Assembly (NCBI GenBank): GCA_000388065.2
Contig: KB932204.1
Origin: Fonticula alba ATCC 38817
Lineage: Eukaryota > Protista > Nucleariida
Length of the DNA stretch: 9,254 nucleotides
Strand: one strand, 5' to 3'
Shown: positions 1 through 9,254 of the stretch, one piece after another
Layout: every line of letters begins with the position of its first letter
Position numbering within the stretch: the first letter of the stretch is position 1
Program-made: the position numbers and the translations under genes
Notes under the pieces: generated by a model
The model's database searches: none
Seen by the model: only the letters and a program-made list of their open reading frames with translations
Told to the model about the DNA's origin: nothing

Positions 1-64
1 AGAGAGAGAGAGCGAGAGAGAGAGAGAGAGCGAGAGAGAGAGAGCGAGAGAGAGAGCGAGAGAG
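1..64 (+). repeat. Compound (GA)n microsatellite with GAGC interruptions, truncated at the window start
   Basis: Direct reading; corresponds to the 3' part of the tract at 7181-7326. Confidence 0.95.
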
Positions 65-517
65 GGAAAGAGAAAAAGAGAAAAAGGTCTCATCCCGCGC
101 GCGTCCATGCAGCTGCCGCGTTCCGGAAACACCCCCGGCCGGTTCCGGGCGTGAGGCCCCAGCAGAGACCTGGCCTATCCGTTGGCAGTCGCCACTCTGG
201 TGCCCGATCGCACGTCCGATCTCGCAGCAGCGGAACCCCCGGGACCGAGCACAAACGCAATGGGGGCGTTCTGATCCTGCCCCCCCCCCCCCCCCCCCTC
301 TCCTGGCGGGCCCAGGGCCGGTCGCCTGCCAGGCTCGTGGCACGGCGGCCGATCTGTCCCAAGATCGACGCATACAGAGGGCGGAGGGCAAAAAAAAAAA
401 CAAAAAAACAAATCCCCCCGCCCCCGTCGCCTGGCTGTTGGCCTGCATCAACCCCCTTCACCCGCTCGCCGCCACCTCCCCCGCACCTCTCCCCCCGCCC
501 CTTCCCGCCCTGACATC

Positions 518-1830
518 ATGGCCACCACCAGCCCCTTCCCGGCGACCGAGCCGGAACTTGTCAAACTCCCGCTCCTCGCCATCGAAAAGCGCTTCATCAA
601 TGACTGCATCCGAGGTTCGGCCCCTGCTCGCGTGTCACGCTCCCTCGTCTTCGCGCTCCCCCTTGCCCCCCGCCGCACGATGCCACACTTGTTAACCTGC
701 CTCCTCCTCGCCACCCACCGCCAGCCATCTGCCACAGCATCTTCCTTGCCCGGCACTTGGACCAGGTTCGCCCGAAGGACTTCCACGCAACGGACCCCGA
801 TGCCGCAGGACTCGACGTTGTGTGGGTGCGACCGCCCCCCCTCCCCCTACCCCCGCCCCCTCTTCTGCTGCCTTCGGTCTTCTTACCCTGCCCCATGCTC
901 CCCTCCGGCACCAGGCCGGTCCCGACATCTTCGGCTCGTCCGAGGGCCCCGCTGCCGACTCCTCGAGCAAGTCCATCCAGCACTTCTTCAACACCCTCAG
1001 CGAATCCTTCATCAAGGAAATCCCCCAACGCTTGTCTCAGGTCCAGGTGACCTCACAGCCGCAGCCCACCTCCTCGGACGACATCTATATCGACATTTAC
1101 GATGTGACCAGCGTCCCGGCCGATGCTCTGGGACAATCGCCCGATCGCGCTGCCGGGCCACCCCCCGGACGCCACCTCGAGCGGTGGGTTCTCCCCATTC
1201 AACTTTTGACCGACTCCAGCCGCGGCCCGGTGGAGCTCTTCAACATCGAAGCCCCGCGCCCCGGTGGAGGTGCTCTTCCCCCGCCCGACAACTCGCCCGG
1301 GGCGGTGGATGGTGCGCCCTCTCGACGGCTCCCTCCTCGTCCCCCTTGCTCCTGTTCCCCCCCCCCCCCCCACACACACACACCTTGGCTTGCATCTTTG
1401 CGGCCCCCTGACACCCGATGGCCCCCTCCCCCTGTACCACCACCGATCCCCCCCCCCCCTTCGTAGCTCGCTTGAAGCTTGAGAACATCCTCGCTCGGAT
1501 CGGCGCACACACCTTGGCCACGTCCAACTGGTGGGCTGACACCGGATCCGTGCGCGTGGCCTTGGTGGTATGAAGTCTCTCACCCTCCTGCCCCCTCAAG
1601 CACACGCACATACACACGCACATACACACGCACACACACACACACACACACACCTTTTCTCCCTCTCTCTCTCCCAACCCGGCTCTCAGCTCGTTTCGCC
1701 CCGACACCTGACCCCTCGCCCCCCTCCCCCGCCTGTCATCCTTCTGGCCTTGGTCAAATAGGTGGCCTTTAAGCCCAAAGATCGCCTCAATTTGTTCCGC
1801 TTCCCCCTTCCACTCCCCTTCATGCGGTGA
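518..1830 (+). CDS. ATG101: Autophagy-related protein 101-like (HORMA domain), 254 aa; join(518..614,725..825,915..1311,1467..1567,1762..1830)
   Basis: Four GT-AG introns (615-724, 826-914, 1312-1466, 1568-1761) give a continuous 765-nt frame ending in TGA. The spliced N-terminus 'INDCIRAICHSIFLARHLDQVRPKD' resembles the Atg101 motif (plant-like 'LRCILHTIFFHRALGLVRPKD'), and 'IYIDIYDV...HLERWVLPIQL' matches the 'LxFY...WExWxI' strands. Family call is from recalled motifs; no search was run. Confidence 0.72.
1601..1651 (+). repeat. (CA)n-rich microsatellite with CACACGCACATA units, in Atg101 intron 4
   Basis: Direct reading; second copy at 8863-8913. Confidence 0.9.
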
Positions 1831-1864
1831 AGAGAAAAAGAAGAGAACAGGTCAGAGAAGCACA

Positions 1865-1870
1865 TTTATT
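1865..1870 (-). terminator. Putative polyadenylation signal AATAAA for RNase H1
   Basis: TTTATT on the + strand, about 145 nt downstream of the RNase H1 stop codon. Confidence 0.5.
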
Positions 1871-1895
1871 CTTGCCCCTCTGGGACATCGGCCAC

Positions 1896-1901
1896 AATAA
1901 A
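1896..1901 (+). terminator. Putative polyadenylation signal AATAAA for the Atg101-like gene
   Basis: AATAAA 65 nt after the TGA, in otherwise GC-rich DNA. Confidence 0.55.
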
Positions 1902-1982
1902 GTACACACACATGTCTCGCCAACGGAGCGACAACCACCCTCGCGGGTTGTTGAAAAGCCCATCTCCTGGGAGACGCCCATC

Positions 1983-2006
1983 GAGAGAGAGAGAGAGAGA
2001 GAGAGA
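1983..2006 (+). repeat. (GA)12 microsatellite between the convergent Atg101 and RNase H1 genes
   Basis: Direct reading; the window end (9254) falls inside the second copy of this tract. Confidence 0.95.
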
Positions 2007-2015
2007 GGCAGCAAC

Positions 2016-3499
2016 CTACTTGGGGGGCAGGCTGCGTGAGCGATTGTATTGGTCGCTGCCTTGGTTTGCCAGCTGGTCGGCCATTTCGTTGCCCGGGATG
2101 CCGGAATGGGATTTGACATGCCGGAAAACCACCGCATCCCGCTCGACCGCATTGCGCTGATCGCACAGCTTCGAGATGTCCATGATGAGATCCTGATGAG
2201 AGACCGGCTGGCCGCCGGAAGTCTTAAAGCCATTGGTCTTCCATTTTGGCAGCCACTCATTGACGCCTGGACGAAGGGTCAATGCACGCGTCGAACGGGC
2301 GAAAGAGCCACGCACAAATGGCCCCCCATGGGCCACGTACTCTTGATGGCGTAGATGCTGTCGGAGTGGATGACAATATTCCGGTCCCCGGGAGCTGTCT
2401 CAAGAGCCCGCTTGATGGCCTGCAGTGGGATGGATGGTTGGCAAATCGAACAGCACCAAGGGGAGAGGCCGAAGGGGATGAAGGGAGGGCAACAGGGAAG
2501 GGGGAAAAGCGAAAGGAGGTACCTTCAATTCGGCGCGCGAGTTGGTGGCCGGCTCGGTCGGGGACAGGGGCTCCGCAAGGTTGCTGCTCCCATGTGCACG
2601 CACATGTTAGTGGGGGGGGGGGGAGCAGGCAAAGAGAAGGGATCAGAGGCCAGGGCCGCGAGAGGAAGGCCCTGCAGTCCCGGCGCAAAGGCCATCGATG
2701 GGCATACCGAGGATCGTGCGGGCCAAAGTAAACCCCCAGACCAGACCCATTCGGTCGCGAACTGCCATCCGTATAGATGTCGATGGATTGCCGAGTCGAT
2801 GCCGGGGCAGGGGGCGATCGGGCGGATGACCCGCTGGAGGAGCTCGACGATCTCGAAGTGGAGAGGGGGGAGGAATAGAAAGAGGAGGAGGAGGAGGAAG
2901 AGGAAGAAGAAGAAGAAGAAGAGGACCCACGCGTGGAGGAGGAGAAGCTCCTCCCGGAGGCACGATAGCCAGACGAATAGCTTGTCGGGTCGCGCGTGCT
3001 GTGCGAGGCCGCCGGCCTCGAGGAGGAATTACTGCCGGAACTTATGTAGCGCTGGGCCTCCTCGCGAGTGCGGAAGGACTTGAACTCGGCCCCGGAAAAG
3101 CCGCTCACCGAGGAGCTACACTCATCCCTGTGCCGATCGCCACGGAAAGTGCGCGGTTAGTTCGATTCCAATGACCCAGCCCGACGGGGGGGGGGGGGGG
3201 GGGGGGGGGGGTAGCAGGAAGCCATTGACGGACCAGGAAGAGTGGATGCCGGTCGAGCGGCCTGAGCGCACGGCGTAAAATTTGGCCTTCCCAGCCGAGG
3301 AACGGGGAGGCATGGCTGCTAAATCGGCGACCTGAGAGGTGACAGCAGGACCCGCGGCAGGGGGACAAGGGCGCGGAGCAGTGGAGGCGGGCTCTTTGGG
3401 GGCGAGGGAGAAGCTGAGCGACCGGTTCCAGGGCCGAACAATCAGGCGACCAATGAGTGAGTTCAGGGGGAGTGGAAGAAGAAAGCGACTCTGCGCCAT
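2016..3499 (-). CDS. RNASEH1: Ribonuclease H1 (N-terminal hybrid-binding domain, Ser-rich linker, RNase H domain); complement(join(2016..2266,2341..2419,2523..2583,2708..3127,3234..3313 or 3499)); 296 aa from ATG 3313, 358 aa from ATG 3499
   Basis: Introns 3233-3128, 2707-2584, 2522-2420 and 2340-2267 are all GT-AG and frame-consistent. HBD: 'KFYAVRSGRSTGIHSSWDEC...VSGFSGAEFKSF'. Catalytic motifs: YTDGS, TNSRAEL, IHSDSIY, WKTNGFKT, HVKSHSG, GNEMADQLA. Confidence 0.95.
2878..2933 (-). repeat. TCC/TCT trinucleotide tract encoding poly-Ser in the RNase H1 linker
   Basis: (GAG)n/(GAA)n on the + strand; translates as SSSSSSSSSSSSSSSFYSS in exon 2. Confidence 0.85.
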
Positions 3500-3994: not shown

Positions 3995-4927
3995 ATGTTC
4001 CCCTTCCACGCTTCGCCTCTCGCCACCGGCCGCCGTGGCTACGCCACCGCCGCCGGTGCCGCCGCCGGCGCCAAGGACTTCGCCCAGGAGGAGCTCTTCG
4101 CCCGGACCCTGCTCGGCAACACCCACATGTCCCACTACCAGGTTCTCGGCCTGCCGGAGCCGGTGTTCGACCTGAGCCTCAGCTCGGCCGAGGCCGTGGC
4201 CTCCGCCAACAAGGCCTCCAGCCGTGAGATCCGCCACGCCTACTACAAGCTGTCCATGCGCTTCCACCCGGATCGCCTGCCGGCCGCGGCCTCCGCCGCC
4301 TGGGGCAAGCCCGCGTACACCCGCATCACCGACTCCTACGCCACCCTGGCCAACCCGGACACCCGCGCCGCCTACGACCAGTCCATCTTCCGCGAGGCCT
4401 CCACCCGCGCCGCGGCCCTGACCTCCTCCCGTGGCCGTCAGTACCAGTTCCACACCTCCTCCGGTGTTAACCCCTCCTTCGCGGCCAACACCAACGCCTC
4501 GGCCTTCTCGGACTTCACCCGCCAGAGCTACCGCCCCTTCGACAACTACAACGCCTTCCACCAGGCCTACAAGCACCACCATGGTGCCGCCTTCGGTCGC
4601 TACTCCGCCGACAGCACCTCCCACCAGGGTGACAACCGCTTCGACATCGGCAACGGCACTGCCGCCCGCATGGCCGACCGCGCCGCCGAGTATGCCCGCC
4701 ACGCTGCCCGCACCACCGGCAGCGCCGCCCGCTTCATGGACCCGGAGCTGGCCGCCAAGATCGCCAAGAAGCAGGCCCTCCCTCGCCGCTTCCTCCTCCC
4801 CTCCCTGACCGTCATGGCTACTCTTGGCGTTGTCGGCCTTGCGGCCATCTACGCCCTCAACGACCGGCCCAGCTCCCTGGAGCTGGACAACCGCCGTTTC
4901 CAGAAGACCCGTCGTGCCTTCGACTAA
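3995..4927 (+). CDS. Class C J-domain (DnaJ-like) protein, 310 aa, with probable mitochondrial presequence and a C-terminal transmembrane helix
   Basis: Single ORF with strong C-ending codon bias. J-domain: 'HYQVLGL...EIRHAYYKLSMRFHPDR...RAAYD' (HPD at 4265-4273). N-terminal 'GRRGYA' resembles an R-2/R-3 cleavage motif. Hydrophobic segment 'FLLPSLTVMATLGVVGLAAIYAL'. Confidence 0.9.
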   Translation: MFPFHASPLATGRRGYATAAGAAAGAKDFAQEELFARTLLGNTHMSHYQVLGLPEPVFDLSLSSAEAVASANKASSREIRHAYYKLSMRFHPDRLPAAASAAWGKPAYTRITDSYATLANPDTRAAYDQSIFREASTRAAALTSSRGRQYQFHTSSGVNPSFAANTNASAFSDFTRQSYRPFDNYNAFHQAYKHHHGAAFGRYSADSTSHQGDNRFDIGNGTAARMADRAAEYARHAARTTGSAARFMDPELAAKIAKKQALPRRFLLPSLTVMATLGVVGLAAIYALNDRPSSLELDNRRFQKTRRAFD

Positions 4928-5932: not shown

Positions 5933-5942
5933 NNNNNNNNNN
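5933..5942. other. Assembly/scaffold gap (10 N) between an A-run and a C18 run
   Basis: Ns in the sequence; true gap length unknown. Confidence 0.99.
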
Positions 5943-5996
5943 CCCCCCCCCCCCCCCCCCTCACCCCTTTCCTTTGCCCCCATCCCGAGCCCTGTC

Positions 5997-6924
5997 ATGT
6001 CTGTCGCCAACGTCCTCCGGCCCACCTTTAACCTGGCTCTTCGGCCGCGGCTCTTCGCCACCGGCACTTTCGCCGCCTACCGCGTGTCCTTCGGCTTCAA
6101 TCAAACGGGCGGAGTCCGGTCCGCGCAGCTGCCCGAGAGGCTCCTCATTCAGGATGTCTCCTTCTCGGTGCAGCCCGGCTCGGCGGTCCTCCTCCATGGC
6201 CCCAACGGCTCGGGCAAGACCACGCTCATGCGGCTGGCCGCCGGTGAGTTGATCCCCACGTCCGGGATATTCACCTGGCGCGGGCAGCCATTCACCCATG
6301 CGGCGGACCTCAGCAAGTGGGCGCACCAGCACATGGTCGAGATGCCGGCCCTCAATGACGGCATGAGCAACCTGCTCACCGTGCGCATCATGATGCGGAT
6401 TTTCTCCCTCCGCCGTGGCTTTGGCGGCAAGGAGATTGATGAGGCTCTCCACATGTTCAAGATCTACCATCTCCGGTGTGTCCCGCCGCCGTCGCCCTCC
6501 TCGAGCCTGGCCCTCCCCCCTTCGCCTTCCCCCCTGGCATGGTGCACATGATCCTAACCTTGGTCTCCCCCCCCTCTCCCCCTCTCCTCCCTCCGACTCA
6601 GCAATCGGAGAATCGGCACCCTCTCCACTGGGCAGCGACGCCTGGTGGCATTCGCCAACATGTGGGCCTCCCAGCGACTCATTTGGCTGTTGGACGAGCC
6701 GAACATTGCCCTTGATCTCCGGTGCGTGCCGACCCCTCCACCGACGCCAGCTTGTGGCCATGCCTTCCCGAATGGGCTTACTGACCGGCCGCACACACAC
6801 CTCCAGCTCGCAGGCCGGCATCGAGGAGGCCATTCGCATGCACCGCGATCGTGGCGGCATCGTCATCGTTGCCTCCCACGCAAACATTGTCCTCGAAGAC
6901 GCCGTGTCCATCCGTATTCGCTGA
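5997..6924 (+). CDS. ccmA: Heme exporter ABC ATPase CcmA-like (cytochrome c maturation System I), 238 aa, nuclear-type with introns; join(5997..6475,6602..6721,6807..6924)
   Basis: GT-AG introns 6476-6601 (branch CTAAC) and 6722-6806 (branch CTGAC) give a 717-nt frame. Walker A GPNGSGKTT, signature LSTGQRR, Walker B IWLLDEP and C-terminal 'HRDRGGIVIVASH' are typical of CcmA. No transmembrane domain. The Arg-rich, acid-free N-terminus looks like a presequence. Confidence 0.85.
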
Positions 6925-7180
6925 TGCGGATCCTGGCTCGGCTGCCGCCGACCCCGACCCCCTCCCGTCAGCCCTTCTCCCAGCCGGGCGCACAATCCCC
7001 CCTCCCCTAGCCCTCTTCCCATTGTTTTCCTCCCCCTCTCCCCCCTTTAGACCGCGCCCCCGGAGGAGAAGGGAGCCCAGTGGTGGGGCTGCGCGCGCCC
7101 TGCTCGAAAGTAACATGCAAAATACACCCCACCCCTTCGAATGCCCCACCCGCGCCCCCACGTACCAGAGCCGGAGAGCT

Positions 7181-7211
7181 AGAGAGAGAGAGAGAGAGAG
7201 AGAGCGAGAGG

Positions 7212-7243
<32 letters not shown>

Positions 7244-7249
7244 GAGAGC

Positions 7250-7287
<38 letters not shown>

Positions 7288-7326
7288 GAGAGCGAGAGAG
7301 AGAGAGCGAGAGAGAGAGCGAGAGAG
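7181..7326 (+). repeat. Compound (GA)n microsatellite, about 146 bp, with GAGC interruptions, followed by a purine-only run
   Basis: Direct reading; contains the start of the duplicated segment at 7263. Confidence 0.95.
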
Positions 7327-9254
7327 GGAAAGAGAAAAAGAGAAAAAGGTCTCATCCCGCGCGCGTCCATGCAGCTGCCGCGTTCCGGAAACACCCCCGG
7401 CCGGTTCCGGGCGTGAGGCCCCAGCAGAGACCTGGCCTATCCGTTGGCAGTCGCCACTCTGGTGCCCGATCGCACGTCCGATCTCGCAGCAGCGGAACCC
7501 CCGGGACCGAGCACAAACGCAATGGGGGCGTTCTGATCCTGCCCCCCCCCCCCCCCCCCCTCTCCTGGCGGGCCCAGGGCCGGTCGCCTGCCAGGCTCGT
7601 GGCACGGCGGCCGATCTGTCCCAAGATCGACGCATACAGAGGGCGGAGGGCAAAAAAAAAAACAAAAAAACAAATCCCCCCGCCCCCGTCGCCTGGCTGT
7701 TGGCCTGCATCAACCCCCTTCACCCGCTCGCCGCCACCTCCCCCGCACCTCTCCCCCCGCCCCTTCCCGCCCTGACATCATGGCCACCACCAGCCCCTTC
7801 CCGGCGACCGAGCCGGAACTTGTCAAACTCCCGCTCCTCGCCATCGAAAAGCGCTTCATCAATGACTGCATCCGAGGTTCGGCCCCTGCTCGCGTGTCAC
7901 GCTCCCTCGTCTTCGCGCTCCCCCTTGCCCCCCGCCGCACGATGCCACACTTGTTAACCTGCCTCCTCCTCGCCACCCACCGCCAGCCATCTGCCACAGC
8001 ATCTTCCTTGCCCGGCACTTGGACCAGGTTCGCCCGAAGGACTTCCACGCAACGGACCCCGATGCCGCAGGACTCGACGTTGTGTGGGTGCGACCGCCCC
8101 CCCTCCCCCTACCCCCGCCCCCTCTTCTGCTGCCTTCGGTCTTCTTACCCTGCCCCATGCTCCCCTCCGGCACCAGGCCGGTCCCGACATCTTCGGCTCG
8201 TCCGAGGGCCCCGCTGCCGACTCCTCGAGCAAGTCCATCCAGCACTTCTTCAACACCCTCAGCGAATCCTTCATCAAGGAAATCCCCCAACGCTTGTCTC
8301 AGGTCCAGGTGACCTCACAGCCGCAGCCCACCTCCTCGGACGACATCTATATCGACATTTACGATGTGACCAGCGTCCCGGCCGATGCTCTGGGACAATC
8401 GCCCGATCGCGCTGCCGGGCCACCCCCCGGACGCCACCTCGAGCGGTGGGTTCTCCCCATTCAACTTTTGACCGACTCCAGCCGCGGCCCGGTGGAGCTC
8501 TTCAACATCGAAGCCCCGCGCCCCGGTGGAGGTGCTCTTCCCCCGCCCGACAACTCGCCCGGGGCGGTGGATGGTGCGCCCTCTCGACGGCTCCCTCCTC
8601 GTCCCCCTTGCTCCTGTTCCCCCCCCCCCCCCCACACACACACACCTTGGCTTGCATCTTTGCGGCCCCCTGACACCCGATGGCCCCCTCCCCCTGTACC
8701 ACCACCGATCCCCCCCCCCCCTTCGTAGCTCGCTTGAAGCTTGAGAACATCCTCGCTCGGATCGGCGCACACACCTTGGCCACGTCCAACTGGTGGGCTG
8801 ACACCGGATCCGTGCGCGTGGCCTTGGTGGTATGAAGTCTCTCACCCTCCTGCCCCCTCAAGCACACGCACATACACACGCACATACACACGCACACACA
8901 CACACACACACACACCTTTTCTCCCTCTCTCTCTCCCAACCCGGCTCTCAGCTCGTTTCGCCCCGACACCTGACCCCTCGCCCCCCTCCCCCGCCTGTCA
9001 TCCTTCTGGCCTTGGTCAAATAGGTGGCCTTTAAGCCCAAAGATCGCCTCAATTTGTTCCGCTTCCCCCTTCCACTCCCCTTCATGCGGTGAAGAGAAAA
9101 AGAAGAGAACAGGTCAGAGAAGCACATTTATTCTTGCCCCTCTGGGACATCGGCCACAATAAAGTACACACACATGTCTCGCCAACGGAGCGACAACCAC
9201 CCTCGCGGGTTGTTGAAAAGCCCATCTCCTGGGAGACGCCCATCGAGAGAGAGA
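7263..9254. repeat. Direct repeat copy 2 (1992 bp) of 1-1992
   Basis: See copy 1. Confidence 0.97.
7780..9092 (+). CDS. ATG101: Second identical copy of the Atg101-like gene; join(7780..7876,7987..8087,8177..8573,8729..8829,9024..9092)
   Basis: Exact duplicate of 518..1830 at +7262; may be the same locus emitted twice by the assembler. Confidence 0.7.

What the first reader, a model, noticed from the sequence alone, without database searches (positions are those of the whole stretch)
5997..6924. Nuclear, intron-containing, presequence-bearing ccmA: System I cytochrome c maturation in this eukaryote
Seen: a CcmA-like ATPase with all ABC motifs intact, two spliceosomal introns and an N-terminal extension (MSVANVLRPTFNLALRPRLFA). 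Established: animals, fungi and many protists use HCCS (System III). System I is patchy; ccmA is mitochondrion-encoded in jakobids and some other protists and nuclear in land plants. Inference: the compact, microsatellite- and poly(C)-rich context does not look like a land plant, so this may be an independent mitochondrion-to-nucleus transfer of ccmA, or System I in a lineage not known to have it. That would be especially notable if the host is an opisthokont or amoebozoan.
Basis: partly seen in the sequence, partly recalled or inferred. Interest (0 to 1): 0.7.

Follow-up and report, generated by a model that had tools for sequence, protein, structure and literature searches.

The report
Nuclear ccmA gene of Fonticula alba
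This is a real, expressed and spliced nuclear gene of the slime-mould-like fungal relative Fonticula alba for CcmA, the ATP-driven motor of the bacterial-type pathway that attaches heme to cytochrome c; it is already named so in GenBank, and the pathway is already documented in other single-celled relatives of animals and fungi.

Summary
Window 5997-6924 (+) is a three-exon gene with GT..AG introns at 6476-6601 and 6722-6806. RNA-derived contigs from four runs are spliced exactly there. The 238-aa product is identical to a GenBank protein named [quoted passage not shown].

It scores 131.8 bits on the CcmA equivalog model TIGR01189, whose cut-off is 131.6. The best non-CcmA family scores 90.8. 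In a tree it sits inside the CcmA clade (100/97), within a moderately supported group (89/92) that holds every eukaryotic nuclear CcmA sampled: plants, Capsaspora, Chromosphaera and uncultured eukaryotes. Its closest relatives are genes on nuclear contigs of two GC-rich uncultured eukaryotes, which share its second intron in position and phase.

The first 20 or so residues look like a mitochondrial presequence. This was judged from composition only.

However, System I is already documented in Opisthokonta (mitochondrial ccmC and ccmF in Capsaspora and Sphaerothecum). An independent gene transfer is neither supported nor excluded.

I could not search Fonticula for CcmB, C, E, F, H or HCCS. Earlier notes from this scan report a nuclear CcmE and a ccmF on other DNA of this genome; I did not check them.

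Verdict: ordinary and already annotated, with a modest evolutionary point.

The parts
5967..5996 (+). Minimal 5' UTR. The RNA contigs start at 5967, just after a poly(C) tract and an assembly gap.
   Evidence: table 8; (N run 5933-5942)
5997..6475 (+). Exon 1 (aa 1-159 plus two bases of codon 160). Holds the presequence-like N-terminus, Walker A and the Q-loop region.
5997..6056 (+). Predicted mitochondrial presequence (aa 1-20, MSVANVLRPTFNLALRPRLF). There is an R-3 type motif RLF|A; 3 Arg, no acidic residue.
   Evidence: composition, motif; pLDDT below 50 for residues 1-17. No dedicated targeting predictor was available.
6198..6221 (+). Walker A / P-loop GPNGSGKT (aa 68-75)
   Evidence: invariant columns G68 N70 G71 G73 K74
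6476..6601 (+). Intron 1: 126 nt, phase 2, GTGTGT...CTAAC...CAG
   Evidence: joint 6474/6601, cut +1, in 4 runs
6602..6721 (+). Exon 2 (third base of codon 160, aa 161-199, two bases of codon 200). Holds the signature LSTGQ (6621-6635), Walker B IWLLDE (6681-6698) and D-loop ALD.
6722..6806 (+). Intron 2: 85 nt, phase 2, GTGCGT...CTGAC...CAG. An intron sits at the same codon position and phase in the closest homologues, on two uncultured-eukaryote contigs (L002, L010).
   Evidence: joint 6720/6806, cut +1
6807..6924 (+). Exon 3 (third base of codon 200, aa 201-238, TGA). Holds H-loop His224 (6877-6879).
6925..7143 (+). 3' UTR as far as the RNA contigs reach. A 966-nt contig lies up to 7100 and has 43 more letters. 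The (GA)n microsatellite begins about 7180.
   Evidence: table 8

Best explanation
Window 5997-6924 is the single nuclear ccmA gene of Fonticula alba (Opisthokonta, Rotosphaerida).

Shown here: the gene is transcribed and both introns are removed. The 238-aa product is a stand-alone ABC ATPase domain of the CcmA family with an intact catalytic site. It belongs to the clade of eukaryotic nuclear CcmAs and is not a recent bacterial import.

Inferred: a presequence of about 20 residues takes the protein into the mitochondrial matrix. There, as in bacteria and plant mitochondria, two copies would dock on the inner-membrane proteins CcmB and CcmC. ATP hydrolysis would then drive release of heme-loaded CcmE on the outer face of the membrane, and CcmF/CcmH would attach the heme to apocytochromes c and c1 (System I). 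The membrane partners are expected to be encoded mostly in the mitochondrial DNA. Their presence in Fonticula was not verified here.
For: Gene model and expression: spliced contigs in 4 runs with GT..AG joints exactly at the model's introns. The product is identical to annotated protein P0001, which lies on a 3.07-Mb scaffold.

Family assignment: TIGR01189 ccmA scores 131.8 bits against a cut-off of 131.6, and the next non-CcmA family scores 90.8. The protist nuclear CcmAs score about as low: Capsaspora 139.6, Chromosphaera 140.1, P0015 138.4. The best PDB match by sequence is E. coli CcmA (87.6 bits). The AlphaFold model has pLDDT 88, and CcmA chains give the highest target coverage (TMt 0.87-0.88).

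Tree (76 rows, 206 columns): CcmA versus other ABC ATPases 100/97. A eukaryotic clade at 89/92 includes plants, Capsaspora, Chromosphaera and genes on eukaryotic nuclear metagenome contigs. Fonticula+P0022+P0023 is supported at 99/88.

Other points: intron 2 is shared in position and phase with L002 and L010. All catalytic motifs are conserved. The N-terminus has presequence-like composition.

Context from papers: plants have nuclear CCMA, CCME and CCMH and mitochondrial ccmB, C and F (PMC10879542). Capsaspora and Sphaerothecum mitochondrial DNAs carry ccmC and ccmF (PMC7027106).
Against: The equivalog score is only 0.2 bits above the cut-off, and the protein sits on a long branch (1.04 changes per column). 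No relative exceeds 43% identity among 1.8 billion representatives. The Q-loop region departs from the bacterial consensus.

No other System I component, and no HCCS, of Fonticula was examined by me. The only indications are unchecked notes of this scan. Mitochondrial targeting rests on composition and a motif, not on a predictor or an experiment. The published opisthokont mitochondrial DNAs list ccmC and ccmF but no ccmB, so the direct membrane partner of CcmA in this group is unidentified.
Confidence: 0.75

Rival explanations
1. Orphan or repurposed ATPase. The gene descends from ccmA but no longer serves cytochrome c maturation. Fonticula would use HCCS (System III) like fungi and animals, and this ATPase would work with another partner or be a relic.
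For: The score is borderline on TIGR01189 (131.8 against 131.6). The branch is long and identity to any relative is low. The Q-loop region is altered. I could not verify any partner gene. Fungi and animals, the nearest large groups, use System III (PMC10879542).
Against: All catalytic residues are kept. The gene is expressed and correctly spliced. Related uncultured eukaryotes keep an orthologue with the same intron. Other protist nuclear CcmAs from lineages with published mitochondrial ccmC and ccmF score just as low. Earlier scan notes, unchecked, report a nuclear CcmE and a ccmF in this genome.
Confidence: 0.15
2. Independent, lineage-specific transfer. ccmA would have moved from the mitochondrial DNA to the nucleus separately in the Fonticula lineage, not once in a common ancestor shared with Capsaspora, Chromosphaera or plants. 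This rival concerns only the gene's origin; the function would be as in the best explanation.
For: In the free ML tree Fonticula does not pair with the two holozoans. None of the three Capsaspora introns coincides with the two Fonticula introns. ccmA is still mitochondrion-encoded in several distant protists (PMC5174734), so several transfers must have happened in eukaryotes.
Against: All sampled nuclear CcmAs form one clade (89/92). Holding Fonticula, its environmental sisters, Capsaspora and Chromosphaera together gives a tree 1.4 log-likelihood units better than the free search, p-AU 0.51. With about 200 columns and no mitochondrion-encoded sequences in the set, the data cannot count transfers.
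Confidence: 0.25
3. Bacterial contaminant or recent horizontal transfer from a food bacterium or symbiont.
For: CcmA is a typical proteobacterial gene, and bacterial CcmAs are nearly as similar (about 40% identity) as the eukaryotic ones.
Against: The gene has two spliceosomal introns that are removed in RNA. It lies on a 3.07-Mb scaffold between eukaryotic genes such as DnaJ and SKIP/SNW. Its G+C content matches the surroundings. It sits in a clade of eukaryotic nuclear genes.
Confidence: 0.03

Closest known systems
Genes on nuclear contigs of uncultured eukaryotes (P0022 on L002, 59% G+C; P0314 on L010, 67% G+C; P0023, P0315)
   Same: These are the closest relatives found: 41-43% identity, and a clade with Fonticula at 99/88. 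They are nuclear, with neighbours RasGEF, ORC5, MMS22L, ribosomal L37ae and Vps18. An intron sits at the same codon and phase as Fonticula intron 2, just after the D-loop ALD. P0022 also has an N-terminal extension.
   Different: The organisms are unknown, and no named relative was found. They lack Fonticula's intron 1.
Capsaspora owczarzaki 'heme ABC exporter' XP_004364551.1 (P0014) and Chromosphaera perkinsii EP01135_P003121 (P0143)
   Same: Both are nuclear CcmA homologues of unicellular opisthokonts, in the same eukaryotic clade, with similar TIGR01189 scores (139.6 and 140.1). The C-terminal stretch HRxRGGxxIxASHAxIxLExAVSxR is very similar. Capsaspora has ccmC and ccmF in its mitochondrial DNA (PMC7027106).
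   Different: Identity is 30-38% across. Capsaspora has three introns at other positions, and its annotated model has no N-terminal extension. Both belong to Holozoa, whereas Fonticula is on the fungal side.
Land-plant CCMA (ABCI1 type; P0019 Rhynchospora, P0084/85/128)
   Same: A nuclear-encoded, stand-alone CcmA ATPase serving mitochondrial System I. It is in the same eukaryotic clade (PMC10879542).
   Different: Identity is 32-38% across. It scores much higher on TIGR01189 (182.6). P0084 has almost no N-terminal extension.
E. coli CcmA in the CcmABCD heme-release complex (PDB 7F02, 7VFP, 8CE1, 8CE5)
   Same: It is the best PDB match by sequence (87.6 bits over residues 45-229). It has the same fold, size and motifs.
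   Different: Identity is 28-29%. It is encoded in an operon, with no presequence and no introns. It has GHQ in the Q-loop where Fonticula has PAL.

Membership tests
CcmA (TIGR01189, heme ABC exporter ATP-binding protein, System I) | Score at or above the curated cut-off of the equivalog model, and better than any other ABC family | tested here: met
   131.8 bits against a cut-off of 131.6, which is barely met. The next non-CcmA family is AztA at 90.8. Each exon taken alone also ranks CcmA first.
CcmA (TIGR01189, heme ABC exporter ATP-binding protein, System I) | Complete ABC ATPase catalytic motifs (Walker A, signature, Walker B with Glu, D-loop, H-loop) | tested here: met
   All are present in invariant or nearly invariant columns. 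The Q-loop region is divergent, as it is in other eukaryotic CcmAs.
CcmA (TIGR01189, heme ABC exporter ATP-binding protein, System I) | Stand-alone ATPase domain of about 200 aa, without a membrane or regulatory domain | tested here: met
   238 aa. The AlphaFold model shows one ATPase domain from residue 25 to the end. It covers E. coli CcmA at TMt 0.87-0.88.
CcmA (TIGR01189, heme ABC exporter ATP-binding protein, System I) | Groups with CcmA sequences in a tree against other ABC ATPases | tested here: met
   The CcmA clade is supported at 100/97 against four outgroup ATPases.
CcmA (TIGR01189, heme ABC exporter ATP-binding protein, System I) | Cognate membrane partners CcmB and CcmC in the same organism | not testable with these tools
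This scan has no note on ccmB or ccmC.
Mitochondrial System I (CcmABCEFH) | CcmE, CcmF and CcmH present; HCCS absent or present | not tested
   There are only unchecked scan notes: a nuclear spliced CcmE (s1-065412) and a ccmF stop codon inside a tRNA (s1-065572). There are no notes on CcmH or HCCS.
Mitochondrial System I (CcmABCEFH) | Mitochondrial matrix location of CcmA | tested here: inconclusive
   The N-terminus has the composition of a presequence: 5 Arg and no Asp or Glu in residues 1-46, an RLF|A motif, and disorder in the model. No targeting predictor or experiment was available.

The most novel reading that the evidence does not exclude
Opisthokont System I may run without CcmB. The published mitochondrial DNAs of Capsaspora and Sphaerothecum list only ccmC and ccmF, yet nuclear CcmA is kept in Capsaspora, Chromosphaera and Fonticula. 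In these lineages the ATPase might therefore dock on CcmC alone, as a CcmA2-CcmC2 heme-release complex. A milder version is that Fonticula matures cytochromes c by System I only, with no HCCS. Fungi and animals would then have replaced the bacterial pathway independently.
Probability: 0.1. Interest if true: 0.6.

Novelty: already known. Interest (0 to 1): 0.3.

Why it matters
If CcmA works with a full set of partners in Fonticula, the bacterial-type cytochrome c maturation pathway survives on the fungal side of Opisthokonta as well as on the animal side (Capsaspora, ichthyosporeans). The last common ancestor of animals and fungi then had System I, and HCCS replaced it more than once within the group. 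[quoted passage not shown] It is an extension of a documented pattern, not a new kind of system. The gene itself is already named in public databases.

Tried and rejected
1. A profile search with five eukaryotic CcmAs hit the 8000-candidate limit. It returned bacterial CcmAs and two-domain ABC proteins, and no new named eukaryote.
2. A search with P0022, the closest relative, found three more unnamed environmental sequences. Fonticula itself was the best named hit, so the identity of the sister lineages remains unknown.
3. Two cluster look-ups named only Capsaspora, Chromosphaera, one plant and one bacterial MAG.
4. The supplementary table of PMC10809612 that should show where Fonticula's ccm genes lie is cut off before the ccm columns. 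The supplements of PMC10879542 mention neither Fonticula nor Capsaspora.
5. Paper searches for Fonticula together with ccm, heme lyase, holocytochrome or mitochondrial genome found no text on System I in Fonticula.
6. Foldseek does not separate CcmA from CbiO or LptB by E-value, so fold alone is not diagnostic.
7. I considered bacterial Ccm proteins as queries to reach Fonticula's CcmB, C, E, F and H. I rejected this because bacterial sequences would fill the candidate limit and the 120 listed rows.
8. Contamination and recent bacterial transfer were rejected on introns, splicing, scaffold context and tree position.

Full report
WHAT IS THERE

The sequence from 5997 to 6924 on the + strand reads as a three-exon gene.
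- Exon 1 is 5997-6475.
- Intron 1 is 6476-6601: 126 nt, GTGTGT...CTAAC...CAG.
- Exon 2 is 6602-6721.
- Intron 2 is 6722-6806: 85 nt, GTGCGT...CTGAC...CAG.
- Exon 3 is 6807-6924 and ends in TGA.
- Both introns split an Arg codon after its second base.

Each exon alone has CcmA (TIGR01189) as its best NCBIfam family. The three matches are collinear on the profile: positions 12-97, 124-159 and 164-196 of 198. Pfam sees only the generic ABC_tran domain.

WHOSE GENE IT IS, AND WHETHER THE MODEL IS RIGHT

A search with exon 1 returned a 238-aa protein, P0001, that is 100% identical over the query. Its source name is [quoted passage not shown], and it lies on a 3.07-Mb scaffold. Its sequence equals exon 1 + R + exon 2 + R + exon 3. 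The locus is KB932204.1 of assembly GCA_000388065.2, and the window is identical to positions 4005-13258 of the fetched stretch L001. Fonticula alba is an opisthokont of the order Rotosphaerida.

Four runs from two samples of one study hold contigs that lie on 5967-7100, with 43 more letters beyond, and have no mismatch. They skip exactly 126 and 85 nt with GT..AG ends. The runs are not on record as RNA, but contigs without the introns can only come from spliced transcripts. The gene is therefore expressed and the annotated model is correct.

IS IT CcmA?

- The full-length P0001 scores 131.8 bits on the equivalog model TIGR01189, whose cut-off is 131.6.
- Two further CcmA models come next. The best non-CcmA family (AztA) reaches 90.8.
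- The narrow margin over the cut-off is typical of protist nuclear CcmAs: Capsaspora 139.6, Chromosphaera 140.1, an uncultured eukaryote 138.4. A plant scores 182.6.
- Among solved structures the best sequence match is E. coli CcmA of the CcmABCD complex, at 87.6 bits over residues 45-229. ABCE1 is next at 80.7.
- An AlphaFold model built on a 73-sequence alignment has mean pLDDT 88 and shows one ATPase domain from residue 25 onward.
- Foldseek finds many ABC ATPases at similar E-values. The CcmA chains give the highest coverage of the target, TMt 0.87-0.88.
- Walker A, the signature LSTGQ, Walker B with its Glu, the D-loop and the H-loop His all sit in invariant or nearly invariant columns.
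- The Q-loop region (VEMPALNDG) lacks the 'GH' of most bacterial CcmAs. The other eukaryotic sequences vary there as well.

RELATIVES AND ORIGIN

An exhaustive HMMER pass over 1.84 billion representatives found nothing above 43% identity. The best single-domain hits are CcmAs. Named ones include:
- Capsaspora owczarzaki (XP_004364551.1, "heme ABC exporter");
- Chromosphaera perkinsii (EukProt);
- a sedge, plus unnamed sequences that begin with the same N-terminal motif and group with it.

Three unnamed hits (P0022, P0015, P0029) lie on metagenome contigs whose neighbours are plainly eukaryotic nuclear genes: RasGEF, ORC5, MMS22L, Rpb8, G-gamma, coatomer and bZIP.

The careful IQ-TREE tree (76 rows, 206 columns, LG+C20) gave these results:
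- The CcmAs separate from four other ABC ATPases at 100/97.
- All eukaryotic sequences fall in one clade of 14 rows at 89/92.
- Fonticula joins P0022+P0023 at 99/88.
- The sister of the eukaryotic clade is a small group of bacterial-type sequences. One of them, P0002, sits on a bacterial contig.

Holding Fonticula, P0022, P0023, Capsaspora and Chromosphaera together gives a tree 1.4 log-likelihood units better than the free search, with p-AU 0.51. A single opisthokont nuclear ccmA is therefore compatible with the data but not shown.

Intron positions:
- In L002 and in L010 (the contig of P0314, with ribosomal L37ae and Vps18 as neighbours) an intron interrupts the second codon after the D-loop ALD, after its second base. 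This is exactly where Fonticula intron 2 lies. Both have GTACGT donors, with a CTAAC (L002) or CTGAC (L010) branch site.
- The Capsaspora gene has three introns, none at a Fonticula position.
- A reciprocal search with P0022 returns Fonticula as its best named hit.

Contamination and recent bacterial transfer are excluded. Descent from the mitochondrial ancestor through transfer to the nucleus is the simplest reading. How many transfers occurred cannot be counted without mitochondrion-encoded sequences.

THE N-TERMINUS

Residues 1-46 contain five Arg, seven Ser/Thr and no acidic residue. Residues 6-16 are amphipathic (hydrophobic moment 0.58). RLF|A gives an R-3 type cleavage motif after residue 20. 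The model is disordered for residues 1-17, and the first strand of the domain starts at residue 25. A loop of about 12 extra residues (34-46) follows. This fits a short matrix-targeting presequence. No targeting predictor was available, so the step remains an inference.

HOW IT MOST LIKELY WORKS

By homology with E. coli CcmA2BCD and with plant mitochondria, the imported ATPase would sit on the matrix face of the inner membrane on CcmB and CcmC. ATP hydrolysis would release heme-loaded CcmE, and CcmF/H would then attach the heme to cytochromes c and c1. In plants CCMA, CCME and CCMH are nuclear and ccmB, C and F are mitochondrial (PMC10879542).

What I showed: the gene, its expression, its family and its clade. 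What I inferred: import, partners and role.

WHAT IS ALREADY KNOWN

- The protein already bears the name CcmA in GenBank and UniRef.
- Fonticula is one of the species in the survey of Butenko et al. 2024, which plots ccmA location and heme lyase presence (PMC10809612). The held copy of the table ends before the ccm columns.
- The mitochondrial DNAs of Capsaspora and Sphaerothecum carry ccmC and ccmF (PMC7027106). PMC10879542 cites this as documented variation of systems I and III in Opisthokonta.
- No paper in the library discusses System I in Fonticula in its text.
- This scan found related things on other DNA of the same genome: a nuclear, spliced CcmE that was followed up (s1-065412), and a first-reader note on a ccmF stop codon (s1-065572). 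I did not test either. There are no notes on CcmH or HCCS.

LIMITS

No tool here searches the Fonticula assembly. I spent the three word-indexed protein searches on CcmA relatives. Bacterial Ccm queries would have been swamped by bacterial hits. It is the first of the decisive next steps.

VERDICT

An independent transfer is undecided. The small new items are:
- the eukaryotic clade of nuclear CcmAs;
- two uncultured GC-rich eukaryotes as nearest kin, with a shared intron;
- direct evidence of splicing.

Interest is low to moderate.

Noticed in passing
window 1-1992 and 7263-9254: A perfect 1992-bp direct repeat (1992 of 1992 bases identical) spaced 7262 bp apart. It does not extend beyond the window in scaffold KB932204.1. 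An assembly gap (N run 5933-5942) lies inside the unit. The gene called at 518-1830 is thus present twice (second copy 7780-8835). It could be an assembly artefact around the gap or a real tandem duplication. ccmA lies once, between the repeats.
   Followed up: partly
window 2016-3499 (-): A gene of 358 aa whose RNase H1 N-terminal (Cauli_VI) domain is split across two ORFs, that is, by an intron (PF01693 hits on 2257-3108 and 3122-3499).
   Followed up: partly
window 3995-4927 (+): An intronless 310-aa DnaJ-domain protein gene directly upstream of ccmA.
   Followed up: no
window 5943-5962 and about 7180-7300: A poly(C) tract just upstream of the ccmA transcript start and a long (GA)n microsatellite just past its 3' UTR. 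The RNA contigs begin and end next to them, so the true transcript ends may be hidden by low-complexity sequence.
   Followed up: no
L002:6001-6770 and L010:4001-4754: Two uncultured eukaryotes (59% and 67% G+C) carry the closest CcmA homologues, with an intron at the Fonticula intron-2 position and GTACGT donors. They may be relatives of Fonticula, but no named sequence identifies them.
   Followed up: partly
L007:3001-3843 (Capsaspora KE346361.1): The annotated Capsaspora CcmA (195 aa) starts only 24 residues before Walker A and has no N-terminal extension, unlike Fonticula, Chromosphaera and the environmental homologues. Its start may be mis-annotated, or the protein may be imported without a presequence.
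   Followed up: no
protein P0189: A 499-aa bacterial protein carries both the CcmB (PF03379) and ABC_tran domains, a natural CcmA-CcmB fusion.
   Followed up: no
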